DNA of 62,967 nt, the filler included, from Lenisia limosa (Eukaryota > Protista > Breviatea): assembly GCA_001655205.1 (NCBI GenBank). It is 13 parts of 13 records of this genome, joined end to end, with 100 filler letters (N's around TTAATTAATTAA, not from the genome) between each part and the next. Parts side by side here need not be neighbours in the genome. Positions count along the whole stretch, not along the records: positions 1 to 25,578 come from LPNZ01002563.1; 12 more parts are not named here. One strand, given 5' to 3'. The stretch's first letter is position 1. Each line of letters begins with the position of its first letter. The notes under the pieces were generated by a model. That model was not told the DNA's origin and ran no database searches. It worked only from the letters and a program-made list of their open reading frames with translations. Shown one piece after another: positions 1 to 22,036 of this stretch. A program made the position numbers and the translations under genes.

Positions 1-1474
1 ATCCCACCATGACCCAAAACTGAGGTTGTTTTTCACTTTTATTAAAACATGAGTATCTGTATGATATCAAACGATATAATAAAAAGTATACATACAGTAG
101 CTATGTCATAATGTAGTATTCCTGTCATTTGTTTTTAAACAATAACATCATGAGGCATGGAGATGGTGTTCCTTAGACTCGGTGACCCTTGATTTGGTCA
201 ACCGCAACGTTTTGAGGTTTTACATTGACCAGCGCTAAAACACGTAGGAGACTCGCCCCATCATCGATACCGTCGACTGCAGTCCCAAGGCACTTGACCC
301 TCTAGTATGCTTCTTAGGCTTTATTTCTGACCGTTTTACGGAGGTTTCTTCAAATGCTGTCTCCTTTTAGCTGTTTTATTAATAATAATTATGAATAGGG
401 TTCGGTTCAAATCGTGGAGGACCTCCTCACATTACACCGAATCCTCGTCAAGCGAATTATATGATATAATATGAATGTTCTCTTTAACCCATTAGATCCA
501 CGACCAAGACTTAAGCGTCTATTAGGCCATCGTCAACAAGATACCTGTTTGGCGTGCGGCCGGCCTTTCGTAAACTTTTTACCCTATGTTTAGTCCCGGC
601 ATCTATGAGGTCCTGTTGTCACCGCGTCTTCTCTGGGCTTTCGACACTTCCCAGTTTTCACTTTCGATAGATATTCTGATCATTGACCTTGTACGCCACT
701 TTCCCACCATTGCCAATTCCCTCAATTGCCATTTGTATTTCCATTTGGTTGAGGAAATGCACCGGTCTGGTTCGTCTAAACGAGTTTGAGGGAGCTCTAA
801 CAGTGGAAACTATTTTGGAATTGTTTTTTGTTTTTTTTTTGTTCTTAAGGTGGTAGTTCACGTTGTACTTTGGTGATTCAAGCAAGAAGGTATTACTTCA
901 TATTGCTAAGGTTGGTGGGACTATTTCCTTTTTCGAAGAACTAAGCTAGTAGTAGTGATTTGTAGACAGAAATTATAGCTAAATTTTTGTCTTTGGGACC
1001 GAAAGTAAACTTTTAGGGACTGAAAAAAAGCGAAAAAAAAGCGAAAAATCCTGACCAACGACCACCCAGTATTTTTTTCTGTATTAGTGTGTTATTTATA
1101 CTTTTTTCCTTCCCAATACACATTTAGTTAAATATTAACAATGGTTTTAGCGAGATTAACTTACAATAAGTTCGATATTAAGTCTTTTCTCAGAGAAAAC
1201 CCGCGTCACTCCGAGAAAATTAGAATTCCTGACACCAAGGGACAGTCTGTCATTAGAGATGACGATTTGTTTAATTGAATTTAGGCCTGGACAACAGGGT
1301 TTGCGTCATTTATTCGCCCTATTAAGAGGATTAATGATATCTCAACTCAATAGGTCTAAAAGTGATGAGGTATGGTGGTTACAAAAGTGATGAGCTTTAA
1401 TTTTGGTAATAATCCAGGTGGCATTATATTCGCTATTATGCATCCTTGTTGAGTTCGGTAAGATAAGCCGACAG

Positions 1475-4400
1475 CAATTACCCAACATCACCGGACCTTC
1501 CTGCACATATGACAGGTTTTCAATTGTTTGGAGTGGACATTTATTTCTTGGCACCCACAGAGTCTGGATGAATCTTTGCGTTCGAAACATGTGTTGCGTA
1601 TTCAAGATGAGTCGAAAAGTAAAAAAAGGCTCCAAGAAAGAAAAACAAAAAAAAAAGTTCACAAAATAGTTAGAAACAGCAATCAATGAAAGGGGAGCAC
1701 TCAGCATTTCAATAGTTTGCCCCCTGCACCATCTCCAAACCAATTCCAAGAAATATGATAATTTGATATGCAAACTTATAATAGAAAATGATAAATGATA
1801 ATGGAACAGAAGCATCCACACATAATATACCAATAAACGTCCATGTAACAAACCTCTGTATCTCCAGGGTTCGCCAGGGCAAGCCTAGCACCTGGAGAGT
1901 CCAACTCAAAGATTTCATTTTCCAGAAGCATGGAATTTGAGTGCCTGTCGCGTGGTAAGACCTATTTGTGAACCCAAAAGTAACAATAAGAACATAGGAC
2001 ATACCAACTGCCCTTACCGAGAAGTTTTTAATTCCGGCGGCGCAAGTGCCTCAATACGGCTGTCCACGACACTCAAACTCACAATCGCAGGCACGGGCCG
2101 GCCAAACAGCGTTGTTGCAATATTGAGCTTCACCTCCGTGCCGGGGGAATAGCTTGGTCTGGAAGGTGTTGGAGAGGGGCAAATTATTGGAAATGACAGG
2201 ATTTATATTTTGTATGTACAATGTAGTATTATACATGTACATATGATATCTATCATTCCCTCTCCCTTACAACAATAAAAATGTTAGAATTCTGTTTAAA
2301 AAGTAGGCTTTGCAAGAAACAGTTGCTGGTCGCAGTTGGGCCAAAAGTGTTACTAGAACTGTCACAAACCTGTCGGAAGTGACGGTGACGCTGAGGCCTG
2401 GTGGAGGGGGCACATAGACCAGCCGCTCAGCCATTGGAGTGTCTTGTTCAGTCTCGACCAGCACCAAGCGAACCACTCCGAACACCACTACTGGGCTTGA
2501 TGGAGTCGCTGAAATGTGAAAATGGAGGGAGGCAAGCTCCAGTGATTGTAATACGTAGAGAGAAGACAGTTAAAACAATGACTAGCAAAGGGAAGAAAGA
2601 AGAAGGAATAATATAGCATTGTGGTACATGATTTATCGGTATGTTATTTCTGGTGAGCTCAGTGTGCTGATACTATACTATTAGAAGGAAGAAGGAGGAA
2701 GAAGGAAGAAGAAGGAAGAAGAAGGAAAAAGAAGGAAGGGGGAGGAAGAAGCCAAGCTGGAAGTGTGAAATCATTATATTGTAAATATATATATATTTGA
2801 TGTATAGCACTGAGAAATCAAAAATAAGGTAGTATTATCAGGCCGAAGCCATCCACACCATCACGCTTATAATATTGGATTATATATCATATTAACCCAA
2901 TCATTTGCCTTACAACTCTGTGCACACAGCTTTCTGCGTGCCTCCCCGATACTCTGTATGAAGAAGATACATCTGGTACCTACACGTTGGGTTTTGGAAG
3001 GATTTCCCGGTTGGTAAATTAGCCACGTCATTCTTGGTCATAGCCATGCCATCCATAAGGCTGGCAATTGGGAGGGTCACGATAGAGGCGGTTCGAGATA
3101 CCAGGTTCATATTACGTGCCATGACCTGCACGAGTGTGAGATAATCCAAATGTTTAATCAAGAGCAAGAGCCCTCACCTCTGCATTCTTGACAAACGCTT
3201 TGATTGTGTACTGTCGCGTGTGCGTTGACCATGCCTATCCAGTCACAATCACATCAGCAACAAACAAAAGAAAACAATCAACAATCTGATTTGTACCCAA
3301 GTACCATGAAATATGAGCACTTTCCCGATAGTTGGTTACTAAGCCCCCCAACTCTAAGCCCCCCAACATGCACTCTGATCTCAGAACATGACATATCGCC
3401 ATTGCTGTTCCTAATGCTCTTAGGACAGTTGCCAGAAACTACGTCGGCATGAAACACGGCACCGGCGGGGGTGGCAGGAGGCAGGCATTCAACTGTACTA
3501 CAAGAGTAAACAGGAGTGTCGTGATATCAAAAATGTGCAAAAAACAAATCTTAAAGCACTTTGGGATGGAAATGAGCAAAAAATATATATCATGTGTTTA
3601 GCAAAATGGAATTGATGACATTTTCCTCGTCTTACCCACTTGATTCCAAGAGGGTAGACAACCATCGCACAGATTTTTGACACTGAAAGGTCAGTGATGA
3701 AGGACTAGAACTAACCCTACATAAGCGCTACCTGTACTATATCATATGGAAGTGTTGAATATGTGGAACAAATCCTAGGTAAGGTATACCCGTATCTTTT
3801 AATAATTTCTCATTACTACATATGCATATACAGTTCTCTAAAAAGGAGAAACGTCGCTAACGGCTCATTTCTCAATACCATTTCATACTCTTTGAGGAGG
3901 AAGGGGTCAGAAGAGGCGAAATGGCATACCCGTCCTTGAAGGTCGTAATACGGCCTAAATCGCCGAAACACTAACAGGTTAGGCTATTTTCAGTTCAGTT
4001 CAATTTCTTTGGTTCGATGGTCGAAACGCAGAATTCAGTACACCTCCACTTTACCTCAGATAAAGTTCCATCTTGCTCCACCGTCATTGAACAGAACTTT
4101 ATGGTCGCCTTCGTAGTCATGGGAGAATGGACACAATGCGTCAGACATATGAACGCTTATCTTTCAACAAATTTCGTGTCAAAATTAGGTAAATTAGAAC
4201 ATCAACGTGTAAGAATTAAAAGAGGCATTTTTTCTCAGCCAATCAAACACCATTTCATTAGAAGATAAAATAAAAAAGGTGTATAATATGATATAATACG
4301 ACTATGCCGGATTTATTATCTACCAATAACCATGAATTTACAGCAACATCCGTAACCCCCACCCACCTGTATGGGTCTATTTGAAAGGTCCTTCGTTTCA

Positions 4401-7035
4401 ACATAAACCCTTGAACCAATACCACTAAAACGCCATTAAAACTGAATAGTAGTACATGTAGTATGATATACTGTTGGTATGACAAATAACGACACAACAC
4501 CTCCCCCCACTTGACTAAATGGCCTGTTTCAGGGTGCAGCCTGAGGTTGATCCGAGACAATACAAGGGGAATCGGCCGGGTGAGTGACACTGAAGAACCA
4601 GATTCCTCAGCTAAGCATACCAGGGAAAGGGAACCCATTCCATCCTAAACAGTCAAACGCTCAGTTATATAAATTTTTCTACTACCTAATGCATGCTTAT
4701 GATCGATAGAAAATACAAATAACTACCAGTTGTCAAAAGTGAAACTAGGAGTTGTTTAATGTGTCAAATCTTCGGTTATAAAGATGACTAGGGGAACCCA
4801 TATGTTGCCCCCCCCCCCCNNNNNNNNNNNNNNNNNNNNNNNNNNNNNNNNNNNNNNNNNNNNNNNNNNNNNNNNNNNNNNNNNNNNNNNNNNNNNNNNN
4901 NNNNNNNNNNNNNNNAGGGGTAACGCGCCTCTTTGGTAGTTGCCATCAACCACTGCCTCCCACGACAGCTACATCCGGTATTAATGCAACTCCATTGTCC
5001 ACTAAACAATACAAGTTGCATTCTTAAAATCTGTTCTGTGTCTACTGCAGTATTCACTCATATACGTACGTACATATACATATATATATCATATTTATCA
5101 TCTGAAAAAAAAAAAAATAATAGTAGGTAGATTATATTATCTATAGTAGTAGATAATATACTAATTATTCAACGGCAATAGAGTATTCATTATATGATAT
5201 GAAAGAAAACTGTTTGTCCATACTGTGAGGGCACGCGGGGAGGGTCCGGAGGCCTTCATGCACTCCACATCAACTACCACCTATAATAATAAATACTGGG
5301 AAATAAATAATGAAAGGGCTTAGAAACAGAAAGACTGGGAAATAGAGAAGACAATAACGACAACATCAATCTTTGAAGAGGACATATTTTTAATAATAAA
5401 GTGGCACCATCATGAATCCCCTCACGTTATCACCAGTTGAATAGCCACTGCTTGCGTATTCTGCCTAAAAACATGTCAAGGTCTGAAAATTGGTCTTTCC
5501 AAGATATTTCTAGAAAATGATAAAGAACAATGTACAATGAAGCGTTTAATACTACATAACTGCTCCAATATGTATATCTGATGTGATATAATATGTATAT
5601 AGTATATAATATGATGTTATATGCTATAAGACAGAAAAATCCGTACCAGTAGTTTGAGAGTTTGAAGTTGATAAGATTGGACTGAGAATTTCCTGGTAAC
5701 TTTTGGGAAACTAAATGTGAACGATGCAACACCACTGAGACGAACCATCAATACCGGTGCCTATTAACCAGCAAAGAGGTAATTACAGACGGCTGATATT
5801 TGCCTACCCCCTACCCTGGTAACTTGGAGATGATGGTTGCGTTATACACTCCCCCAGGGACTTGGGAAGGAAGGGTCCAATCACAAGCAAATGTCCCGTC
5901 TGAGTGTAAGAGGGTGTTTATTGGAGTTTCCGATGAATATCATTTGAGAATTTACAGGAACAATATCCGTGTTTTGTTCCTGAAATGCCCACAAGAATGA
6001 ATCATCTTTACCAACCCCAATAGCTTTAACCTCATATTTCTACCCACAGAGGCAAGTAACACTCACAAATAGTCGACTACCATCCCTTCATACCCCGAGA
6101 GAGACAATGTGACGTTGCAGTGACATCCCCCTTTGGCCCTCTAATTTCGAGGGACAACCCAGTGGACACCGAACGCTCCAGAGTGCGGTTCAATGCTAGA
6201 TGATGTGAAAACCCAACGCTGGAAGTGAGTAAAAAATTCAGAGTATTCGTACCAAAAATAAAGCTCAAAACAAAATGCCTATACCCCCCACACAGTTAAT
6301 CATAATGCCAGAGAAGCGGGCAGTTTCGCCTGGCTTATAGATCGGGCGGTCGGCCACAAGAGAAGATGTCATCTTCTGACTGGGGGAAGACCAAGTCTGA
6401 TGGAGCACTTCCTATGATGGTGTGGGTGAATGGGAATAAGGTTTAAAGATTCCACATTATTAATTAGTTATTGCTGCAAATGGTATAAAAGCTCCACACC
6501 CTTTCCCACAAACTCAATTCCAAATATTGATCCTAAGCCTGTTCATTAATTACTGTACTCCAAAAAAAACCCTCAACAGCCCCATACCAGCCCATACCAA
6601 AATGGCCTCGTTTTCAGCGTCAATAGGGAACATTCGAACTGATTTATCATTTGCGGAAGAGCAAATTGACGAGGAGAATGGAGAGATGATAAAGAAAGGA
6701 AAGGGGAAATGAAGAGGAAAGATGATACTCATTCTAAGCTCTTCATTCACCACAACGTTTTAAAAAAATGATGAAAAAGAAAGGCTGAACTTACCTTCAA
6801 ATGCCCTCTCTCCACGCAGCCACTGTGCGCCAGTCAAGAGGGCCACAATACAAACAATCAGTAATATGAAGACATAGATGAAGGATGTCAGCTTGGTGCG
6901 GAGGGGGACGACAGAATGAGGCTGAGGAGGATCATTGGGATAGTATGGCGGAGATGCATCGCTGTCTCGAGTAGGGAGCTCCGATTTAAGATTTCTTCGT
7001 CTTGAAGCGTTAGACATGGCACCAAACACCATCAT
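1475..7035 (-). CDS. Multi-exon alpha-2-macroglobulin-like (MG2 / A2M_N_2 domain) protein with N-terminal transmembrane anchor; 3' end unresolved, may continue past the left edge
   Basis: Spliced minus-strand exons give, in order: MMVFGAMSNAS...KLTSFIYVFILLIVCIVALLTGAQW (TM, 7035-6795); ADRPIYKPGETARFSGIM (~6360-6300, MG2 'DRPIYxPGE' motif); LEIRGPKGDV; FACDWTLPSQVPGGVY; RKFSVQSYQLQTLKLL-AEYASSGYSTGDN-VVVDVE; PIPLVLSRINLRLHPETGHLV (~4590-4510); GVVRLVLVETEQDTPMAERLVYVP (~2480-2400); PSYSPGTEVKLNIATTLFGRPVPAIVSLSVVDSRIEAL (2158-2018); MLLENEIFELD (1944-1854). Splice phases were consistent where checked. No thioester CxEQ motif seen in the window. Confidence 0.82.
2797..2940 (-). repeat. Dispersed non-TIR repeat family C (~150 bp) in an intron of the A2M-like gene
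   Basis: Consensus GCAGAAAGCTGTGTGCACAGAGTTGTAAGGCAAATGATTGGGTGAATT...CGTGATGGTGTGGACGGCTTCGGCCAGATACAACC(T)nCTCATTGCTATAT. Other copies at 7895-7935 (part), 36365-36460, 37295/37507-37560 (split), 56060-56210, 57570-57680 (deleted), 59297-59445, 61350-61430 (part), all on +. Confidence 0.85.
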
Positions 7036-8801: not shown

Positions 8802-8951
8802 ATGGTCTAAGAACACCAAATGTTATTCAAGTACATGGGGATTATGGTCTAAGAACACCAAATGTCATTCAAGTCAATGGGGATTATGTCATTCAAGTCA
8901 ATGGGGATTCAAGTACATGGGGATTATGTCATTCAAGTCAATGGGGATTAT
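8802..8951. repeat. Imperfect minisatellite (GGGGATTATGTCATTCAAGTCAAT-like units) just upstream of the Cys-rich gene
   Basis: Repeated ATTCAAGT(AC/CA)ATGGGGATTA and CTAAGAACACCAAATG segments. Confidence 0.85.
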
Positions 8952-9029: not shown

Positions 9030-12000
9030 TATGGATCACGACCGCCCAGACTGTCTGAAATGCATTGCTGCCGACAAGTTCCGAAGTGTCGAGTGCGACC
9101 CCGGTGTGGCTTCAGACGTGTGCGACTTTTGTGCAAATCAATTCCGAAACGACAGGGCCGGCCATTTCTGTGGCACTTGCATGGTTACTGGGGGGTATCA
9201 TCGATCGTATTACCACGGTGCAAGATGAACTTCTCTTATTTAATGTCAAGTTACAATATTCAGGACACATATTGGCATGCCACCCTTAACAGGAATGACG
9301 AGACGGCAGTGTGTAACTGTATGTTTTTCAAATATCTGGAGGCTTCCATCATACCATTTTGTTGCCTGGACTTCATCAGTTCTTAATAAATACATCGTAG
9401 CTGGAACCTTTTCTTGGTGCTAGTATTAACTATCAAGCCTGTAACCTCTGTGACAATACGGCCGAGTACCTGCACACAGGCTGCACAAGCGACACGGACA
9501 CCGTCTGTGACAGTTGTAGCTCTATTCACCGAGAAGGAATCGGCGGTGATAGGTGTGGTCCTTGTCTGGACGGCTATTACCATNNNNNNNNNNNNNNNNN
9601 NNNNNNNNNNNNNNNNNNNNNNNNNNNNNNNNNNNNNNNNNNNNNNNNNNNNNNNNNNNNNNNNNNNNNNNNNNNNNNNNNNCAGTCTGTGACCTCTGTG
9701 AGCTGACTCACCAATATCTGAAAATCCCATGCTCCAATGTCAATACCGTTTGTGACACGTGTGACAATCTGAATCGACTGGGCTTGACAGCATCATCATA
9801 TTGCGGGGATTGCAAGGACACGTTCTTCCATTTGACTGAGGGTAGTGTTGCTTCAAGATTGAAGTGTTCTTGTAAGCAATGTGACAATCATGTCTTTTTT
9901 TTCTCACCCATACAGAGTAAAAGGTGGCGTAAAATACTGATTGGATTCCTTCTACCTACTTACTTCCTTATACTAATAGACTACAAAAACCATCTTCGTT
10001 TTTTCTTTTGTTATATAAGCGATAATGGTATTTTGCAAAATAATAAGTCCCCAGCTCAAAATTACTTTGACCTTCTAGCTTGTCATCTTTGTCCCAATGT
10101 TGAGTTCGTGACACAACCCTGCACAAAAGTATGCATGCGTGTTTGAGTAAGAGCTATCTCACGTTTGTGAAAAACTAGTCTGACCCCCCCAGAACACGGA
10201 CACGGAATGTGCTGCATGCAGCAGCAGGAACCGTGAGGGTAATAATGGCATTATCTGCGGTCGCTGCGCATCAACATTCTTTAACACCGGTGATGGCGCT
10301 TCAAATAGCAACTCAGTCTGCAACTGTTGGGGGGGGGGGGNNNNNNNNNNNNNNNNNNNNNNNNNNNNNNNNNNNNNNNNNNNNNNNNNNNNNNNNNNNN
10401 NNNNNCCCAGCAGCGTGCAACCTTTGTAGTGGTGCAGCCATCTACCTCAAGGAAGCCTGTCAGAACAACAAAGACACAGTGTGCGATAGCTGTTCAAATG
10501 TCAATAGATTTGACTCTTCTGGAGACGCCTGTGGTCCGTGTTTCAGCGGCTACTACCACTTTGACGAAGACTCAGACGGCCATATTTCAACTTGCAACTG
10601 TATGACGGTTACTGTCAGTAGCTGCAAGTACTTTATTTTAACAAATGTACAAATTACGAGATATTATTTTCTGTTTTGTGCTGTCAAAATATTATGGACC
10701 ATTTTAGTTTGCTCGTTATGTGATGAATCGTACCACTACCTGAAGACACCATGTTCCAATGTTGACACCGTGTGTGACACGTGTGCTAACCTGAATCGCC
10801 TCAACCTAGCTTCTTCTTCATATTGTGGCAACTGTCAGAGCTCTTACTTCCATTTGACTGAAGGAAATGTTCCGTCTCGAGCGGAGTGCACTTGTGAGGG
10901 GGAGGCAGCAACAATACATCGAATGCGATATAATATATAATATAATATAATATTACCTGAAGTGGGTTAATATGTACTGTAACGCTAATAAAGAAAAAAA
11001 ACCTGTGAAAAAGCAAAGGGTGAGCCAAGGGATCCCAAATTCATGGTTTTTTTGCATCGTCAAATCTTTTTCCAAACCCCAGAACACTATTAATAACAAT
11101 ATCTGTCGCAATACTTTGTTGCCTGCACGGAACCCTATTTTACCATATTTTAAATAAAAAAAAACCCCTTTTTAAACGACCTTTGACACAACGAAGCATG
11201 TTCTTACAATATAACGTACTTTACAAGGAACACTGTGCCTTTATAAAATAGCGAGATTAATCGGGTTAGTTCAAGGTAGCATACATGACGCATGATATAT
11301 ATGTATATTACTATGTTGTATATATTAACAGTAGACAAATCATATATTACACATAGCTACATGCTATGTATGAGAATATGACATGATGTTCTTTGTTCTA
11401 ACCAATTCAGCATGTTTGGTTTGTCCCAATTCGCATTTCATCAATTCACCATGTTCTTTGGTTAGTGTTGGTTTTTGCTATATTTGAGATCATTTTCGCT
11501 GGTAATGGTACTGTTTTGACGTATTTTAGACAACTGACACTGTTTGTGATTCATGTGTGTCCAAAAACCGAAACGGGAACAACGGCATTATCTGTGGTAC
11601 CTGTGCAAACTCGTTCTTTAACACCTTTGACGGACACTCCAACAGTAATTCGCTCTGTAGTTGTGAGTGGGCGTTAAGCAATCAATATTATATTACTAGG
11701 TTTTCTTGTTGATATTCCTTTCAAATGCAGTCATCAGTTCCAAACACTCCTCACCAGCAGCGTGCAACCCTTGTAGCGGTACAGCCATATTCCTCAAGTT
11801 AGCCTGTCAGAACAACAAAGATGCAGTGTGCGAAATGTGTTCAAATGTCAATAGATTTGACTCTTTTGGAGTCACCTGCGGTCCGTGTTTCAGCGGCTAC
11901 TACCATTTTGACGAAGACATGGACGGCCATATTTCAACTTGTAGCTGTATGTAGGAGTTTTTTTTTCTTTTCATCACCTTTGTCCCTTATTATTGATGAT

Positions 12001-15000
12001 CGCTAATAACACTTGTATCAGTACAATTATGCCTGTTTTAGTTTGTAACTTATGTAACTCTGCCGACGTGTTCCTTAAGTCTGAATGTACGAACGTTAAC
12101 TCAGTCTGCGGCACCTGTGCGGAACTGAATCGTTTGAATAAGGACATATCTACTTTTTGCTCCATCTGCAAGCCAAATTTCTTCCATTTATCGGAGGGAG
12201 GGCTTGACTCTCGCCTCCCGTGCACTGGTTTGTGGTGTTACCATTCATTATATTCAATCATGACTATTACTGCCTTTTTCTAAAATATAACAAAGCTGTT
12301 GTCAATATTTCAATGTAAACTTTTGCTCTCTTCTGTTCAAAGTTATGTTAGTTACGTCTTCAACTGAGTCACTTTTTTTGTTGCACCCTGGTTTAAAGAG
12401 CGTATTTAAGGAACTGAACCTTTTAGCCTGCACCACCTGTCCGAATACAGGCTACATCACAAATGCCTGTACTCTGGTTAGTGACGGCATCAGCATTGAA
12501 TTCAAAATAATCTCACTCACAAACACTTAGACTTCGGATGCAACATGTGGAGTATGTGGTGACCATAACCGCCAAAGTAACAACGGTGTTATTTGCGGAC
12601 AGTGCCAGTCTGGTTTCTTTAACCTATTTGACGGGGACATTTCAAGTAACACCGATTGTGAAGGTGGGTGGTGTCATAGTAGCAATCACATAATATTTTT
12701 GGAGTTTCCAGCTCTTGCCTCAAGGTTAGTTGCTTAATAAATCTTGTTGAGTTTCTGAAAATGATGACTTTGTTTCATTAGAGTTCCTTCTTTCTTACCT
12801 TGTCATTAACTTATTCGCGGGTTTAATTTAAGGCCATTACCTTGTCAGCTTGTCGACCTTGCAACCAGAACTATCAGTTCCTCTCAACCGAGTGTCAAAA
12901 GGACAGTAATGCACTCTGTGAGAACTGCTCGAGTGTAAATCGCGGCAATGAAGCCGGAACAAAGTGTGGCGCTTGCTTGGATGGCTACTACCACTTCAAT
13001 GAGGACTTCTCTGGCTTCACGTCAGAATGCAGCTGTAAGTGGTCACAGTTTTGAGAGATATGGTGGCTTTCTTAATTCGTTCAGTATGCGATACGTGTGA
13101 TGCGGTGTCGCTCTACCTCAAGTCTGCCTGTACAAACGTTAACGCCATTTGTGAGACGTGTGCCTCACTTCAAAGGCAAGACGCCTCAGGGACCGAATGT
13201 GGAACCTGCAAATCTGGGCATTATGGCTTCCTTGGCCAATTCTCTGGCACATCACAGTGTTATGGTGGGGTGTCATTAGGAAAATTGTATCCTACATTGT
13301 TTCTCTTCTTATCCCATTTTAGAGTGTAACACCTGCTCGAACCTTCAATTCCGTGTCAATTATTGCCAATTGGTATTGAGGGAGGGTGGTGCTTCCTTTA
13401 ACCAACAGTATTCTTAAGGGAGAGAACTAGAAGCGATGTGGAATTTTTCATAAAGTATCAGGATGCATGATAAAAAAAGTTACAGAAGTTTTTCGAGGGA
13501 TTCTACTCCAAATTTCTCATGAAATATTATTAACTTTGTAATAACCGTAATCAGTGCTGGTTTGAATGTTGGTTAAACTGTCTAGTTCCAAGACATTCAT
13601 TGTATGGACTGTGTCGAACGAAACCGTTTGGGTCATGATGGCGAGGTCTGTGGTCACTGTTTGAATGGTTTCTACAACCCAAGTACTGGAGAGAGCGCTG
13701 ACAATACAGAATGTCCAGGTATGATTATTTCGCATTGCACCCCTGACAGTATAACACACCTTTAGAATGTACCTCCTGTGACACAGAGATGTTTGTGTCC
13801 ACTGCGTGTACCAAGGTAAGAGGCTCTCGTTTCTCATGCATCCTCGATCATGCCCCCTTGATTCCCCTTCTATACTCAACTAATGCATCCTTTATTCTTC
13901 CTCGATATTGCTGCTACATCCTTGGTGTTATTCTGAGAAGTGAATTTTCGCTCTTCTCAGCAGAAGTCACCCCTCCAGACGTCAGATACGAGTTGCTCGA
14001 CGTGCAGCTCCAGAAACAGAAAAGGACATGACGGGATCACGTGTGGTCTTTGCAAGACAGGTTTCTTTAACACCAACTACGGCGGCTTTATCAGCAATGA
14101 GTCATGCACTGGTACATGGGATGGCGATCTCTTCACCTGAGTGAGACCCCTGTCATCCTGTTAATCTCAAAAATTTGATATAAGTGACAATATTATGAAT
14201 TCTAGCCTTGATGTTCTCAATAGAAAAAACTGACACCTCCGAAACCCATGATACTAAAAAGTGCAACATGTATATAGCACATTGTGATATAGCTGTAATA
14301 TAGGATTTCATATATATATATATATATATATATGCATTCATACTATATATAGTATATGCATATCATAATAAATATGCATATCATGTGATCATACATACGT
14401 AATATAGTCTGATAGTAAGTTTGTTTATTACCCTGATTTCTCAGTTACAACCCCTGCACATTTTACTTTTAGGGTGCTCCACCACATGCAGTTCTACTCG
14501 CTACGCAGCTGCCCCGTGCAGGGAGGATGCAGACTTGGACTGCCAGCTGTGTACCAGTTTAAACAGAAATGGAAACACCGGTAGGGAATCATCATATTGT
14601 TTATTGGAGTGCGTCCCGACATGACCTTTTAGGTAACACCTGTGGAACGTGCATCACTGGCTACTTTCTTCAGGGCAGCGGTGACACCGCGGGGGTCATC
14701 GCCTGTAAAAGTAGGTCGCAAGCATCGTTGCAACTCTTCAGGTTGCAGGACAGCCAGTACAGCACAATACGTCAAGGAGCCTTGTTCCCCTGTGACCGAC
14801 ACTCTATTCGGAACATGTAGCACCCTCAACCGGGAAGGCCAATCTGGTGATTTATGTGGACCTTGTTTGGACGGTTATTGGCATGCTGGAGATGGAGCTT
14901 CTGACGCCACAACCATATGCCAAGGTGGGGGAGTTTAATTGACATAATAAAGCAGTATATTCACCTCTGCCTGTTTGCCTGTTTGCCTGTTTCACTTCTG

Positions 15001-17262
15001 CCTGTTTCACCTTGCAGCGTACACACCTTGTGGCGAGGAGAACCAGTACATATCCACTGCAACGTGGGTGTTGTGCCGTTGACAACTAGGGCTTCACTTC
15101 TGTTCAAAAAAAGACTGAATTCCCCGAAAACTATCTATATTTCACGGTCTTTTTTGAAACGAAGTGAAGCCATATTGACAACAGAAGCTTTTATTCTTCT
15201 TGTTATTGCACACAATATTCTAACTTCGTTCTATGTGAAAGGGTGGTAATGGACAGCTATTCTGGTTTATATGGTCAGATCTCTCTGAGATCCGGACCAA
15301 AGCCCCCATAAAGCCCTATCATATTAATACAGTTATTAAAGGTATAAACACATTAGGTAGCACAATGGGGTGCCGACAACGGTTTAGAGGTTTTTTCTAA
15401 TTCTTCATAGAATACTGATAGAATCTGGTAGAATTATGATAGAATTTAGTCAGCTGACCATTTTATGATATGATTGTTCTTGTTGTGGGTGTCAATGTGT
15501 CCCCACTTAGTGCTTAAAAAGGAAGAATTGAGTAACACCCGAGGTTGATTCTTGAGTATCATATCTTGAATATAAGCGATGTTAACAACACTTTTGCAGC
15601 TAAATCGTATATTTGTTTCTTTTTATCAGTTAACAATTACAGCAAAACAGCGGATGTTGAGTGCGAAATGTGCTCGTCTCTCAACCGCTTTGGGTGGGCT
15701 TGGTGTTTGCTCTTTCCATATCAACAACACAACTATCTCACACGACAAGGTACAATAACGTTATTTGCGGCCAGTGCCTAGACGGCTATTGGCATAACTT
15801 TGGTGATGTCGCTGATACCAGTTTATGTACTCGTAAGCTACTTCCAGGGTTATAGTGGCGCGTGATCTGATTCCTTTTTATTGCTTGTCATGTTGTAGTA
15901 ATCATTATATCTTCAATTTGAAGTAGCCTCGATTCACACTCACCATTCATCAATTTGTTCATCATTATGAAACCATCTCCCAATATTGTTTATCTTCCAA
16001 ATGATCCTTTTTCTTTTCATTTTTTTTTGTCAAATACAATACAAATATATTAGGGTACGTAAGCTACTTCATTTGAAATATTGTTGTGCTCAAAGCATGT
16101 TTTGAATGTCCACTATAGCATGTCAAATGTACTGCGCTGAAGGCTCCTACATCTCGCAAACTTGCACAGCCACCACGCCCACGGAGTGTGCCACGTGTGA
16201 CAGTTTAAACCGTCTTGCCGGTAACCAAATCACATGTGGCACCTGCACGGACACGTATTACGACACCACGGATGGCGATAAGGCGGCTATTTCCAGCTGC
16301 AGTCGTAGGAGGGCTGGTCTTTCGGTTCTGAATTTTTACAATTGCTAATTACACAGCATGCGCTGTCTGTGCCAACTCTCAATACGTTAACAACGACTGC
16401 ACCACAACCCAGAACCGGCAGTGTCTCAATTGCATCGCTCTCCACCGCAATGACGGAGACAGTGTCACTTGCGGATCTTGTAGATCAGGCCATTTTGCCA
16501 CTGGTGCTGAAGAAACCAACTCCATTCAAACTTGCCAGGGTGAGGTGGTCATGTTCATACATTTTAAAAATAATCAAAATTTTTCAATCTACTGATGATT
16601 TCTTCAAAATCTCACTTGTCCGTTCATTCACCCCATCCCCTCTCAGAATGCAAGAAATGTGCGTCGGATGAGATGGTATCCACTCCTTGCTCAAGCTCAG
16701 CTGATACCGTTTGTGTACAATGCTCGCTATATGGACGGAACCCTAACGACGGCGAAACATGCGGAACATGCAAAGTTGGAACTTTTCTCTTTTCACCACA
16801 ATGGCCATTGTGTCTTGGTCCAGCATTTACGTTTTCAGGAGGACCATTACAACATTGCCAACGGAAACCTCATCGGGTTCACCGATTTTTGTTCAAGTTT
16901 GCAACGGGTTGTACGGGTATAATTTCTTGAGTGACCTTCGTATTCGTTATTCTGATTCAATACCCCGCTCTTTTAGCTTGCGTGAAGCCATCATTCAATC
17001 TCTACGTGTCCACTCTGTGTACCTTGGTCTCACAAGGTATGGCAACTACTATCCTAATGGCTTCCTTCCTTTATTATTCGACGACATAACGCAACATTAG
17101 GATATAATGAGGTTGATTAATGCCTCTAACCCTTTAGCGGTGTATAAAGCCTGCAGTGCCGACTTGCACCGACTGGGTCACCTTGAGAATCGATGCGGTA
17201 ACTGTGAGTCAGGCTACAGCTCTGCGGATCCCAGTGGAACAACTGTGTGTGAGGCTGTTTAA
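9030..17262 (+). CDS. Large cysteine-rich tandem-repeat protein, about 21 modules of ~60 aa with 8 Cys each (TNFR-like CxxC..Y..C..D..C plus NR..CGxC..GYY..C); true 5' end uncertain
   Basis: Successive exons such as ACNLCSGAAIYLKEACQNNKDTVCDSCSNVNRFDSSGDACGPCFSGYYHFDEDSDGHISTC (~10412-10600) and VCSLCDESYHYLKTPCSNVDTVCDTCANLNRL (~10709). Most modules are bounded by phase-1 GT-AG introns. The last exon ends ...GTTVCEAV* at TAA 17260-17262. No signal peptide or TM seen. Confidence 0.88.
15087..15174. mobile_element. MITE family A copy (TA-flanked GGGCTT...AAGCCC hairpin, ~90 bp) in an intron of the Cys-rich gene
   Basis: tAGGGCTTCACTTCTGTTCAAAAAAAGACTG...GGTCTTTTTTGAAACGAAGTGAAGCC, long imperfect inverted repeats; same sequence recurs about 20 times in the window. 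Confidence 0.85.
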
Positions 17263-17884: not shown

Positions 17885-20800
17885 TTAGACCAAGAGTGGA
17901 GAGTCGAGAACCGCCACACCCGACGCCACGCCGCCGTCATCCTTATCTTCGGGCTTGGTCCGGACCAGATGTCCCAAGTGCTTATTGTACACCTCACTGT
18001 CGCTGTTCCTTTATCGTTAACGGTTTCATAGATAATAGTAATGAGTACTTTGCGTGGATTATGTTTAAAGCTGAGTCATTGTGGCATTGAAATATTATAT
18101 AATTTAAAATTAATTGCAACGAAGTTAGTTAGCTTCCATATTCATCGTTAGGAACATGCCACATCCAACTCACCCGAGATAGCCCGCAAAGATGCCAAGT
18201 TCTGATACGCACACGTGCTCCGTGGCCTTGAGATCTCGGATCAGATGGTTGCGGACCTTGACGGGATGCACTGAAAAGTGAGTGCAGTTATGGTAGATGT
18301 AGAGCTAAAGAATGGGGGCAAAAATGAAACAGTTCTTCATTGCTTCATTGTGGATTATATGACAAAATGGACTATTGCTGGCAGGGTTATCAGCCAAACC
18401 CATTTTGGGCCCTATTCCATCAACCTCTATCATCATGGATTCTATAATGGTAGCACATCAAATCACAGGATAGCCGCAACCCACCTCTTGACATCAGAAT
18501 AAAAGACCTTCTCGTTTCCTTATCCATTTCCTTCAACTGCGTCACGATATCTTCTCCAAAGAAACATTGTCCTCCACCTTCACGCTAAATTGATGAATGT
18601 GCGAAGTGAGTAAGCTGATCAATGGTAGCATTCAAATAATGAGTTGGAGTTGACATTGACCAAGGTAACACAATCATGCTGAAGGGTAACAAGATTGATT
18701 TAAATCAACAAGAGTTCCGGTAATACCTGTGGCTTCAGGACAAAATCTTCACAGTTTTCAATCGCCAATTGTGCATGAGCATCACCATTCTCCCTGGTGG
18801 GTTAGCAGATTTATTTGTAATTATATCATACAATACAACTTCCACTGCTCATTTCAAAGTAATGAATGAACATAAAAAAGGGATTGCTCATCCCAAATAT
18901 TTAGCACTTCACTAGGATGATTATTTACTTGAATAAGTTTTGCCTCTCATTCAACTTGAAACAAACCGTTCATCAAGGGACAAGAGTGTACCAAAGACTT
19001 TCCTGACACTTTCTGCTTCAACTTGAGGCAAAAACCTTTTGAGGTAAAACCGAGAATCAAAATATCGGATCTGATATATTATATGATATATGATACTATA
19101 TGATATTATCGACCTTATGCAACTGTCACTCACACCATCCACTTGATAAAACTTATGTAGTCCATATAAGGTGACCCGAAATTTTAATATCTGATATTTA
19201 CTTCTTGTACTTATTATAAAACTGATATAATATCGATATACAGTACATAACAGATAGAATATTACACAACACCCATCAAATGCCTACTTTTCAATGACAC
19301 CTTCCTGCGCAAACACTTGTTGCATCTATTCAGTCAAAAAGATAGTTCCCTCCAAAGTAAGGGAGCAAGGGAAGGGGTAAAGTGACAAAACCGCAGTAAC
19401 CTCGCATAACATGCCAAACAGTCCTCCCACTTTCTTCGTTCCAACAAGCTGATACGACACATCAGGACATTTAATTGCGTTTGACTTCTCAAGAAGCGTT
19501 CGGCTTGCCCATAAACCTACAGACCATGAACGCTATCTAACATCCAAAAGAATACTACGCTTTTCCCTGGTCCAAAAATCGGATTACAATATATCACATA
19601 AACAGAAATAGAATAAGATACATCTATAAAACTTGATAAATGCCCACCCCCACCCCCCGGCCGTCTATGACTCACCATTTGGCTCGGTTGCGTCAACATA
19701 GTCATCAGGGCTGTAGCCAGCCCGGAAATACACCACTCCAATTTCTTGCTTTTCTGGGATGATAAGTATCTCTTTCTTTCCTTTGAGCAGGTATTGCTAT
19801 TTAAAACTGGATCACTATTTCAACACTCTAATGAAACGAAGGAGAAGCAACCCACCTTGATTCGGTAATGAAATCTGAAGGGCTCCAGAGTCTGACAACT
19901 CACCATAGTGAAGTACCTGGAAATAAGGACAATATACTATTTGATTGGCTTCTTTATGATAAATTACAGAAATCGGAGGAATGCATCGGTAATACCATGA
20001 TATTATGATACTATTTAAATTGGGACAACAACCCGAAACAGGAACTCTCATCAATGTACACAGGGCCATTGAAACTGAACATACACAGCTGCAAACCTCC
20101 TTCAAAGATGCCCTTGTGACTGGAATACCCTTGGCCTTGAGTTTGTCGGCAATGAGGGTCTGATCAAACACATTAGCCTCCCCTAAATACGTCACTTCAA
20201 TCAACCACTTTCATAGCTAGAGCCCCGGCAGGTCTGAAAGGAAGCCCAAAACTAACCTGGTTGGACAACAAAGAGCACTGATGCTTCTGTGTTGTTGTAG
20301 TTCTAAAGATATCAGGAATGGTAATATGTACATGTGTATATGTAATTATATAACACAACATAGAAGTATGTACTATGATAAACTACTACAGTTCTCTCAA
20401 AGCTCTATGTCAGAAAAGCGCATCCCATTTGCTTTGGCCGCCCAACGAACTTTGTGACACGTTGAAAGGAAGTCCGGTACTTCTGTTGCTGACTTCGACT
20501 GCGGAACTGAAACAGTAACTCTCAAGTTTGAGATTGGTTATCAGTAGAATACTGGTCCTTGATTGATAGTGATACCATCATCTTCACAAAAACAATGATG
20601 ATATGATATGTGTGTATTATTACATATTTCTTTGTAAGTGATGGATTGAAATAGAAAAGGCTTCATTCACTATCACTATACTAAAGTTTGTAATCAGTGC
20701 CAATTGCAAACTGTACAAAAATTGAAGAACTGACCCACCCCCCACTTGAATCGGCCAATTCTGGGAATGTTTCAGCATGTATGGCGTTGATAGAAGTAGA

Positions 20801-22036
20801 GTGTGATGCGAAGGCGGCAGAAATTGTGTTTATTTCAACTGCAGCAGTGAATTTAATATATTTTGCATTCATTACTACCACCATAACTCTTGGGGGAGGG
20901 GGTACAAAAGGTGATAGATGATGTTTTGGGGGAGGAATGGGTCTCCTAGCTGAAAATCCAAAACCCCCAAAAATCATGACTTGAAGAAAGGTTAGTGGTC
21001 CCAACTTACTCTGAACCATCTTGTTGCCCTTGCTGCTGCTTTCATACATATAGTCCTGTCGGTGTATTCCTGCTTTGTACTAAACAATGTGGTTAAATTA
21101 CACTCAATAAAAATAACAAAATTGTTTTCAATTTAAAAACACTTTTGTACGATATCCAGAATGAATGCAATGCAATACAATTCTATCAAGGATTTTAAAA
21201 CGGGTTGATATAATTCTAGAAAATGGAAAGAATTAAATTACAAATAGTTTCACTGAGGGCTGCACTGGTACCCCCTTAGGTCTCACCTTGGAACCTGAGT
21301 TTCTGGTCTCATTGTAGATAGAAAAGAGCTTGGCAGTGAACGGGTCCGCGTCCCCCAACCTATGATGTGAAAACATATGCCTCTATCTCAGAAACCTGAA
21401 ACAGTTTGTTTTAAAAACCTGGATTTTATCAGTCCATTTTCGAACCCTAAAAAAGCCCAGCCCATTTTGACAAAGCCACTATCCTTATTGTTGAAAGTCC
21501 CTATCCACTTGTTATGTAACGCACAGAATTGCTCAAAAACACCGCCTCACATCGAAAATATGTCATTCAGGAAAGAATGTGAACAAGACGCAGCATGCAC
21601 AAGCTTGTTGAGAGAGGATGCAATATCCTGGATTATGTGACCAGGGAAATGAAGATGGTTTGTGATTGGATGACCAAAGATTAACATAGCCACCAGTTAC
21701 CAGATTGAATATTTCAAAGTTAATGTACACCTCCCTACCAAGGCTTGCTGGAACAATTCTTTCGGTATCGGTGATGGATGATAAGTAAAAGGCAGACTGG
21801 ACTCAATCATTGTCTTTGACATCTTCGTCATAGTTTTACTCACGGCTTTCTCCGTGCTTAACCTGCAGTATTATAATACATTCTGAAACTTATGGCTTTC
21901 TTTCCCTTACAATACAACAATGCGTAATAATAATTTAAAGAAACCCAGTTTTCCAAAAAAACATAAAAATAATGTTGACAATCCTCCGAAAGAGCCCATA
22001 CTTGATTTGGTCATTATTAGGGGCGCTGAAGGACAT
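17885..22036 (-). CDS. GSS: Glutathione synthetase (eukaryotic type), multi-exon, apparently complete
   Basis: Exons encode [95 protein letters not shown] and GHLVRTK...[17 protein letters not shown]. These match the conserved eukaryotic GSS motif order (VLKPQREGGG, SELGIFG, RTK, GGVAAG). Confidence 0.95.

What the first reader, a model, noticed from the sequence alone, without database searches (positions are those of the whole stretch)
1475..7035. Intron-rich eukaryotic gene for a bacterial-style alpha-2-macroglobulin-like protein with an N-terminal membrane anchor
Seen: about 18 short exons, missed by the ORF track, splice into a protein with a short N-terminal tail, one hydrophobic helix, then DRPIYKPGE, IRGPKGD, W.LP....GG.Y, LHPETGHL, AERLVY, YSPG..V.L and VSLSVVD motifs in MG2-to-A2M_N_2 order. 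Known: A2M/thioester proteins are protease traps and complement-like opsonins in animals and envelope protectors in bacteria (E. coli YfhM, encoded with PBP1C). Inference: as I recall them, the PEGG-like, AERLV and 'LLE.E..EL' motifs belong to bacterial MG2-domain A2M-like families rather than animal TEPs. That would mean an old bacteria-to-eukaryote transfer, since intronised and given a type II anchor, possibly a surface protease-trap defence in a microbial eukaryote.
Basis: partly seen in the sequence, partly recalled or inferred. Interest (0 to 1): 0.82.

Follow-up and report, generated by a model that had tools for sequence, protein, structure and literature searches.

The report
Membrane-anchored half of a macroglobulin gene
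An intron-rich eukaryotic gene encodes a single-pass membrane protein whose outer part matches the front half of bacterial-type alpha-2-macroglobulins, but the protease-trapping half is nowhere in the sequence we hold.

Summary
On the minus strand, from ATG 7035 down to at least 1854, about 20 short GT-AG exons join into one unbroken frame of 624-652 aa. Exons are 50% GC and introns 36%. The product has a 48-aa tail with a PPYY motif, one strong hydrophobic helix (aa 49-70), then macroglobulin (MG) domains. Homology to the A2M family is solid. The spliced model scores 74.5 bits against an HMM of 39 bacterial A2Ms and 57 bits (E 6e-20) against a Desulfuromonadaceae protein. It matches in two colinear blocks, the MG2 domain and the end of the bait-region domain, with the same spacing as in bacteria. 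Both blocks run across predicted splice junctions. The assembly gap lies inside intron 9 and the phases match across it. No A2M/MG7, thioester or C-terminal domain exon, and no CxEQ motif, occurs anywhere in the window. The "protease trap" reading is therefore unsupported, and the 3' end is unresolved. The two matched blocks resemble thioester-type bacterial A2Ms more than E. coli YfhM or the few animal sequences I could compare. I could not make a phylogeny with eukaryotic sequences, so horizontal transfer remains plausible but untested. Dictyostelium offers a published precedent.

The parts
1854..7035 (-). Supported span of the gene: ATG at 7035-7033 to the end of the last homology-adjacent exon
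   Evidence: Unbroken spliced frame of 624-652 aa through GT-AG introns. Exon GC 50% against intron GC 36%.
6795..7035 (-). Exon 1: start codon, 48-aa cytosolic tail, transmembrane helix. Donor GTAAGT, phase 1.
   Evidence: In-frame stop 12 codons upstream of the ATG.
6940..6951 (-). PPYY (a PPxY motif) in the N-terminal tail, aa 29-32
   Evidence: Regex on the model. Its role as a WW-domain ligand is inferred.
6826..6891 (-). Single transmembrane / signal-anchor helix, aa 49-70
   Evidence: Kyte-Doolittle 19-aa mean of 2.98. It is the only hydrophobic segment in the supported model. The tail before it holds 7 K/R against 4 D/E.
6598..6638 (-). Exon 2 (41 nt)
   Evidence: AG/GT sites with matching phases. 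Aligns to the strand preceding MG2 in the bacterial HMM.
6294..6411 (-). Exon 3: start of the MG2 domain (DRPIYKPGE)
   Evidence: Pfam MG2 E 3.8e-4 on the exon alone. Panel HMM 29 bits.
6106..6195 (-). Exon 4: MG2 continued (IRGPKGD)
   Evidence: Inside the 54-bit HMM block, aa 88-240.
5815..5899 (-). Exon 5: MG2 continued (WTLPSQVPGGVY)
   Evidence: Panel HMM positions 462-485, colinear with exon 3; 4.7 bits, corrected E 0.08 within the gene region and 0.28 over the whole window.
5647..5734 (-). Exon 6: end of MG2 and link to the next MG domain
   Evidence: Inside the 54-bit block.
5426..5464 (-). Exon 7 (39 nt)
   Evidence: Inside the 54-bit block.
5211..5280 (-). Exon 8
   Evidence: Its start lies inside the 54-bit block. 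The donor was chosen by phase.
4951..5001 (-). Exon 9, ends in phase 1
4611..4950 (-). Intron 9, which contains the assembly gap 4820-4915
   Evidence: Donor GTTGAT, acceptor CTTAG, phase 1 on both sides. A 12-nt C run at 4808-4819 abuts the gap.
4499..4610 (-). Exon 10 (LHPETGHL); the donor is uncertain
   Evidence: No homology available to fix it.
4367..4424 (-). Exon 11; frame chosen among two alternatives
4055..4108 (-). Exon 12; acceptor uncertain (alternative at 4155)
3889..3970 (-). Exon 13
3640..3682 (-). Exon 14
3368..3497 (-). Exon 15; donor uncertain because a perfect 15-nt direct repeat follows it (3339-3367)
3178..3234 (-). Exon 16
2914..3125 (-). Exon 17; three possible donors (exon ends at 2984, 2928 or 2914)
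   Evidence: Enumeration of GT-AG solutions. My first 26-nt 'intron' here was rejected.
2370..2495 (-). Exon 18 (AERLVY); acceptor paired with the exon 17 donor (exon starts at 2508, 2536 or 2495)
   Evidence: Its 3' part lies in the second homology block.
2018..2158 (-). Exon 19: first half of the MG6-like domain, the end of the Pfam A2M_BRD model (YSPGTEVKL, VSLSVVD)
   Evidence: Pfam A2M_BRD E 0.044. Geobacter-type HMM 24.6 bits, corrected E 2e-7. 35 bits and about 55% identity to L025 across the exon 18/19 junction.
1854..1944 (-). Exon 20; ends in phase 0 at a GTTTGT donor-like site
   Evidence: No homology beyond 'APPE'.
1342..1853 (-). Unresolved 3' end. Either read-through for 25 hydrophobic codons to TAA 1778-1776, or splicing into a 180-codon open frame (1345-1884) that stops at 1344-1342.
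   Evidence: No A2M-like signal here.

Best explanation
This is a real, spliced eukaryotic gene on the minus strand. It encodes a type II (N-in) single-pass membrane protein.

Shown: a short tail with a PPYY motif, one signal-anchor helix, then about 550 aa. That stretch begins with an MG2 domain and ends with the first half of the MG6-like domain that closes the Pfam bait-region model. The spacing between the two equals that in bacterial thioester A2Ms.

Inferred: the roughly 300 aa in between are three more MG beta-sandwich domains. The array therefore stands on the outer or lumenal face of a membrane. The PPYY tail would let Nedd4-type ligases control its sorting.

Shown: what is in the window has no recognisable MG7, thioester or C-terminal domain.

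Inferred: as encoded here it cannot work as a covalent protease trap. It more likely serves as a rigid MG-domain stalk or binding platform.

Its nearest relatives that I could reach are bacterial. An old bacterial origin followed by intron gain is the most economical history, but it is unproven.
For: - Gene model: about 20 exons, all GT-AG, intact frame, exon GC 50% against intron GC 36%.
- Membrane anchor: Kyte-Doolittle 2.98 for aa 49-70, 48-aa tail with net positive charge, PPYY at aa 29.
- Homology to single proteins: phmmer of the spliced model against L025 gives 57.2 bits, E 5.8e-20. Blocks 89-189 and 546-598 match L025 489-594 and 938-991.
- Homology to profiles: panel HMM 74.5 bits, Geobacter-type HMM 47.3 bits, hhalign probability 97.5%.
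- Exons alone: Pfam MG2 E 3.8e-4 and A2M_BRD E 0.044.
- Splicing adds 25 bits over exon 3 alone, and the alignments run across six predicted junctions.
- Relatives have the architecture MG2 ... A2M_BRD - A2M - TED - bMG10 and carry CxEQ in 156 of 159.
- No such exon and no CxEQ anywhere in the window.
- Eukaryotic neighbours.
Against: - The 3' end is not fixed. The last supported exon ends without a stop at a site identical to a donor used earlier (GTTTGT), so more exons may follow, perhaps beyond the left edge of the piece.
- The middle 300 aa have no detectable similarity to anything.
- No transcript, orthologue or close homologue was found, so expression and selection are unproven.
- A small exon could hide in the gap.
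- The bacterial panel was seeded with exon 3, which inflates the scores of the first block.
Confidence: 0.6

Rival explanations
1. The gene is a full-length thioester A2M. Its 3' half (bait region, MG7, CUB, TED, C-terminal domain) lies outside the window or was lost in assembly. The protein would then be a membrane-tethered protease trap.
For: The last supported exon ends in phase 0 at GTTTGT, the same donor as the exon at 2370, with no stop. Nearly all bacterial relatives carry TED and CxEQ. An MG6 domain cut in half is structurally odd. The piece ends only 1.85 kb downstream.
Against: At this gene's exon density, 1.85 kb should hold about 230 aa, enough for the bait region and the well-conserved A2M domain. 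Yet HMMs of that domain, Pfam and a CxEQ scan find nothing there on either strand. The longest intron in the gene is about 475 nt.
Confidence: 0.25
2. The gene descends vertically from an old eukaryotic A2M/TEP lineage and not from a bacterial transfer. Its likeness to bacterial proteins only reflects slow evolution of the MG2 and MG6 cores.
For: The bacterial L025 region is itself as close to human A2ML1 (48 bits) as to E. coli YfhM (47 bits), so the kingdoms are not cleanly separated. Human C5 shares the YSPG..V.LN.AT motif with the exon at 2020-2157. The high intron density implies long residence in a eukaryote.
Against: Typical members of a bacterial family that was not selected against this sequence score higher than C5 or YfhM in the 56-aa block: median 92 and top 137, against 66 and 60. 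The exon at 2020-2157 hits 105 of 159 bacterial proteins but no PDB animal chain. In PDB, exon 3 reaches only E 1.5, to TEP1.
Confidence: 0.3
3. It is a decaying remnant: a pseudogene, or a fragment of a transferred gene that is no longer functional.
For: It lacks the functional C-terminal half. No homologue or transcript-derived protein was found in 1.84 billion representatives. The middle region is unrecognisable.
Against: An intact frame of more than 620 codons across about 19 introns, with canonical splice sites and a clear exon/intron GC contrast, is not expected of a dead gene.
Confidence: 0.07
4. Bacterial contamination or a chimeric assembly.
For: The nearest relatives are bacterial MAG proteins.
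Against: The coding sequence is split by about 19 spliceosomal-type introns. Identity to bacteria is only about 25-55% in blocks. The flanking genes are eukaryotic.
Confidence: 0.02

Closest known systems
Bacterial thioester alpha-2-macroglobulins of the COG2373 type (labelled 'YfaS' by JGI), e.g. the ~1715-aa proteins of Desulfuromonadales/Geobacteraceae (L025/P0121), and those of Cyanobacteria/Melainabacteria, Terriglobia and Fimbriimonadaceae
   Same: An MG2 domain and the MG6-like start (end of A2M_BRD) are recognisably homologous and equally spaced: about 480 aa in this gene against about 470 aa in L025. Identity over the last block is about 55%.
   Different: The bacterial proteins have 350-800 aa of extra N-terminal domains (CarboxypepD_reg, bMG3). 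After the shared part they continue with A2M, TED (CxEQ) and bMG10. This gene starts at MG2 right after a transmembrane helix, has introns, and shows none of the C-terminal half.
E. coli YfhM (ECAM) and Salmonella A2M, periplasmic lipoprotein protease traps encoded next to pbpC
   Same: Same superfamily. The two blocks align colinearly to YfhM 390-461 and 758-786.
   Different: A very distant relative: 6 bits. YfhM is a lipoprotein with bMG1/bMG2 domains, a thioester and a pbpC partner gene. None of these is present here.
Dictyostelium COG2373-like proteins (DdiCPRas2 and a paralogue; Elias and Novotny 2008, PMC2430557)
   Same: A published case of bacterial-type A2M-like proteins in a microbial eukaryote. 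The authors explained it as transfer from prokaryotes.
   Different: According to the paper, those proteins are very large, keep A2M_N, A2M_N_2 and A2M-like regions, and one carries an inserted GTPase domain. I could not fetch their sequences, so any relationship to this gene is untested.
Animal TEP / CD109 / complement C3-C5 / A2M
   Same: MG-domain array. The YSPG..V.LN.AT and VD motifs of MG6 are shared with human C5. CD109 is also membrane-attached.
   Different: Animal proteins have a cleaved signal peptide, MG1, a bait or anaphylatoxin region, TED and a C-terminal domain, and CD109 uses a GPI anchor (established knowledge). Exon-level similarity is weaker than to bacteria.

Membership tests
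A2M / thioester-containing protein superfamily | MG2 domain (Pfam PF01835) | tested here: met
   Exon 3 alone: E 3.8e-4, 21 bits, below the gathering score because it is only a quarter of the domain. Spliced exons 2-8: 54 bits to the bacterial panel HMM; hhalign probability 97.5%.
A2M / thioester-containing protein superfamily | Bait-region domain model (PF07703) ending in the MG6 'VVD..v..l' strand | tested here: met
   Only the last ~50 positions are recognised: Pfam E 0.044, 28 bits to the Geobacter-type HMM, 35 bits to L025. The homologous position in human C5 is 552-595.
A2M / thioester-containing protein superfamily | A2M (MG7) domain after the bait region (PF00207) | tested here: not met
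   No hit in any stop-free segment of either strand of the window with Pfam, a purpose-built HMM or full-length HMMs.
A2M / thioester-containing protein superfamily | Thioester domain with a CxEQ motif | tested here: not met
   No CxEQ in any open segment of the window and no TED-like HMM hit. 156 of 159 bacterial relatives have it. It could lie outside the window.
A2M / thioester-containing protein superfamily | C-terminal receptor-binding / MG8-MG10 domain | tested here: not met
   No hit in the window.
Bacterial A2M (YfhM type and COG2373 type) | Signal peptide or lipobox plus extra N-terminal domains (bMG1-3, CarboxypepD_reg) | tested here: not met
   The model has a 48-aa tail and an internal anchor helix, and MG2 starts about 40 aa after it. 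YfhM, L025, L004 and L015 have 340-510 aa before MG2.
Bacterial A2M (YfhM type and COG2373 type) | Sequence closer to bacterial than to animal members | tested here: inconclusive
   Exon-level and block-level scores favour bacteria. Only PDB animal chains and one C5 segment could be compared, and the tree without eukaryotes was uninformative.
Horizontally acquired gene | Nested within a donor clade in a phylogeny that includes eukaryotic homologues; patchy distribution among eukaryotes | not testable with these tools
   The spliced protein cannot be submitted to the large searches. No eukaryotic A2M/TEP sequences could be fetched. Similarity is spread evenly over several bacterial phyla, 28-57 bits.
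Type II single-pass membrane protein | One uncleaved hydrophobic helix far from the N-terminus, with the positive charge on the N-terminal side | tested here: met
   Hydropathy and charge count only. No dedicated topology predictor was available.

The most novel reading that the evidence does not exclude
A eukaryote captured a bacterial thioester-A2M gene long ago. The gene was then broken up by about 19 introns, cut down to its MG2-to-MG6 domain array, and given a type II anchor with a PPxY sorting tail. That would create a new family of eukaryotic surface or endosomal MG-array proteins that no longer trap proteases.
Probability: 0.3. Interest if true: 0.6.

Novelty: new variant of a known kind. 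Interest (0 to 1): 0.42.

Why it matters
A2M-family proteins are known as protease traps and opsonins of animals and as envelope guards of bacteria. They are rarely reported from other eukaryotes, Dictyostelium being the published case. A membrane-anchored form that keeps only the MG array would show that this scaffold can be reused without the thioester machinery. If its bacterial origin were confirmed, it would be a well-aged example of a transferred gene that acquired introns and eukaryotic sorting signals. As it stands, the case is incomplete: the organism is unknown, the 3' end is open and no orthologue is known.

Tried and rejected
- PDB searches with single exons gave nothing useful. 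NCBIfam on 10 pieces gave nothing. Pfam on all other exon pieces and on 1-1700 of both strands gave nothing relevant.
- Exact look-ups of 11 raw ORFs found none on record. A metagenome scan with the 62-aa piece found no relative.
- I aligned the exons to E. coli YfhM 330-1000 to get round the length filter. MAFFT stretched the fragments, and the search returned only E. coli YfhM fragments. The same stretching occurred with L025.
- My eye-match of 'DTE|TLWVP ... LPNS..ATWII' (1563-1385) to the FKDTAFW / LPDNLTTWR motifs of the A2M domain got no support from any HMM, so I dropped it.
- A putative last exon at 1709-1774 was rejected for low GC. A 26-nt 'intron' in my first model was rejected.
- Codon-usage scoring trained on the exons did not discriminate.
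- A FastTree of bacteria plus the model was uninformative.
- The idea that the organism is Physarum-like rested on homopolymers at the gaps. These are exactly 12 nt on two gaps and may be sequencing artefacts. The Physarum supplements mention no A2M. I dropped the idea.
- One protein search was left unused, because no query by reference could rank eukaryotic relatives.

Full report
**What is there.** The gene lies on the minus strand. The ATG at 7035 has an in-frame stop 12 codons upstream. It opens an exon that encodes a 48-aa tail, with 7 K/R, 4 D/E and a PPYY motif at aa 29. One strongly hydrophobic stretch follows, aa 49-70, with a Kyte-Doolittle mean of 2.98. It is the only such segment in the supported model. 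A helix this far from the N-terminus, with the positive charge before it, is read as an uncleaved signal anchor with the N-terminus inside. That reading is an inference from hydropathy alone.

**Gene model.** I joined the coding pieces by hand and by enumeration, using GT-AG sites and matching phases.
- The result is about 20 exons of 39-241 nt and introns of 52-475 nt. Together they give an unbroken frame of 624-652 aa down to 1854.
- Exons are 50.4% GC and introns 36.3%.
- Junctions that lie inside the two homology blocks are backed by alignments that run straight across them.
- Junctions in the middle of the gene are chosen only by phase and site quality, and have alternatives. These are 4610-4055, the donor after 3368, and the pair 3125-2914 / 2495-2370.
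- My first model held a 26-nt intron, which I rejected. Three single-intron solutions there score the same.

**The assembly gap.** The gap at 4820-4915 sits between a GTTGAT donor (intron starts at 4950) and a CTTAG acceptor (next exon starts at 4610). The upstream exon ends in phase 1 and the downstream exon needs phase 1. The frame therefore continues across the gap without any missing letters, and the flanks look intronic. A hidden exon of 3n bases cannot be excluded. A 12-nt C run abuts the gap. A 12-nt G run abuts the gap at 10341.

**Homology.** Single exons are too short for the large searches.
PDB and NCBIfam gave nothing either.
- Pfam on single exons gave two sub-threshold hits from the same family, in the right order: MG2 at 6268-6411 (E 3.8e-4) and the end of A2M_BRD at 2017-2202 (E 0.044).
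- The breakthrough was a scan of 185,579 prokaryotic genomes seeded with the exon-3 piece. It returned 38 loci, all holding A2M-type reading frames, mostly 1500-2450 aa.
- Against these, the spliced model scores up to 57.2 bits, E 5.8e-20 for a single comparison. The best is L025, a Desulfuromonadaceae MAG.
- The match is in two colinear blocks. Model 89-189 aligns to L025 489-594, which is MG2. Model 546-598 aligns to L025 938-991, which is the end of A2M_BRD, at 35 bits and about 55% identity.
- The spacing between the blocks is the same in both proteins.
- An HMM of the 39-protein panel gives 74.5 bits. Its first block is worth 54 bits, against 29 bits for exon 3 alone, so five further exons add signal.
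- An HMM of 120 Geobacter-type proteins gives 47.3 bits. These were chosen by likeness to L025, not to this gene. hhalign gives a probability of 97.5%.
- Across all 1316 stop-free segments of the window, on both strands, only these two exons are significant.

**What is missing.** The bacterial relatives read [N-terminal domains] - MG2 - MG3/bMG5 - A2M_BRD - A2M - TED - bMG10, and 156 of 159 carry CxEQ.
- In the window, nothing after the VVD strand resembles the A2M domain, TED or bMG10. I tested this with Pfam, a dedicated HMM and full-length HMMs. No open segment holds CxEQ.
- The 1.85 kb left of the last supported exon could hold about 230 aa at this gene's exon density, so the well-conserved A2M domain should have shown up if it were there.
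- The 3' end is open. The exon ending at 1854 has no stop and ends at GTTTGT, the donor also used at 2369.
- Reading through would add 25 hydrophobic codons up to TAA 1778-1776. Splicing into the 180-codon open frame 1345-1884 would add 72-95 aa with no homology.
- The gene may also continue beyond the left edge of the piece.
- The middle 300 aa match nothing. That they form three MG domains is inferred from the conserved spacing.

**Bacterial or animal type?**
- With identical settings and a PDB-sized database, the exon at 2020-2157 hits 105 of 159 bacterial proteins at E<=10 (best 4.5e-7), and exon 3 hits 155 of 159.
- In the PDB the first exon hits nothing and the second reaches only E 1.5, to TEP1. 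The PDB holds A2ML1, A2M, C3, C4, C5, cobra venom factor, TEP1, CD109, YfhM and Salmonella A2M.
- In a 56-aa block, Smith-Waterman scores are 66 for human C5 and 60 for YfhM. The bacterial median is 92 and the top is 137.
- This favours the thioester-type bacterial group over both animals and enterobacteria.
- The caveats are real. The panel was seeded with exon 3. Only a handful of animal sequences could be compared. L025 itself is as close to human A2ML1 as to YfhM.
- Similarity is spread over Desulfuromonadales, Cyanobacteria/Melainabacteria, Acidobacteriota and Armatimonadota (28-57 bits), and a tree without eukaryotes was uninformative. No donor can be named.
- Transfer from bacteria is plausible and has a published precedent in Dictyostelium (PMC2430557), but it is untested here.

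**How it probably works.**
- Shown: a membrane anchor plus the MG2 and MG6-start domains.
- Inferred: an array of about five MG beta-sandwiches is held on the non-cytosolic face by a type II anchor, and its traffic is set by the PPYY tail through WW-domain ubiquitin ligases.
- Without a bait region, thioester or MG7-CUB-TED body it cannot trap proteases. A stalk, spacer or binding platform is the most likely role.
- If the missing half turns up outside the window, the tethered-trap reading returns.

**Surroundings and organism.** On the plus strand at about 9.5-17 kb lie repeated cysteine-rich modules of the TNFR_c6 type. On the minus strand at about 19.3-21.1 kb lie exons of a eukaryotic glutathione synthase. 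No RNA family is present. The organism could not be identified. None of the raw ORFs is in the 15-billion-protein collection.

**Verdict.** The family assignment is confirmed for the N-terminal half. The bacterial affinity is partly supported. Horizontal transfer is untested. The protease-trap function is unsupported by what the window holds.

Noticed in passing
window 9500-17000, + strand: A run of at least six similar cysteine-rich modules (C..C.....Y...C......C..C...NR......CG.C), each on its own exon. There are weak Pfam hits to TNFR_c6 (best E 3.6e-4) and laminin-type EGF. Two assembly gaps (9584-9682 and 10341-10405) fall inside this gene.
   Followed up: partly
window 19300-21100, - strand: Short exons of a eukaryotic glutathione synthase. 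Pfam gives GSH_synthase E 0.004 and GSH_synth_ATP E 0.004 on single pieces. This confirms a eukaryotic genomic context.
   Followed up: partly
window 4808-4819 and 10329-10340: Two of the three N gaps are directly flanked by a homopolymer of exactly 12 C or 12 G. This looks more like a read-end or assembly artefact than biology. The gap lengths are therefore doubtful.
   Followed up: no
window 2683-2751: A purine-rich microsatellite on the + strand (GAAGGA-like units, pyrimidine-rich on the gene strand) sits inside the long intron between the exons at 2914 and 2495.
   Followed up: no
window 3339-3367: A perfect 15-nt direct repeat (CTAAGCCCCCCAACT, 1.9 copies) lies immediately downstream of the exon ending at 3368. 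It offers two identical GTTGGG donor sites 15 nt apart, in the same phase, so alternative 5-aa isoforms are possible.
   Followed up: no
window 1345-1884, - strand: A 180-codon stop-free frame, the longest in the gene region. It can be entered in phase from the last supported exon but has no detectable homology. It may hold the true last exon.
   Followed up: partly
window 150-330 and 510-810: Two GC-rich islands (45-60% GC) in an otherwise AT-rich stretch look like exons. They gave no Pfam or HMM hit on either strand. AT skew flips sign near position 1000, hinting at a different gene on the + strand.
   Followed up: partly
window 8802-8949: A tandem repeat of 40-42 nt units, about 2 copies at 93-95% identity, lies between the A2M-like gene and the cysteine-rich repeat gene.
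   Followed up: no
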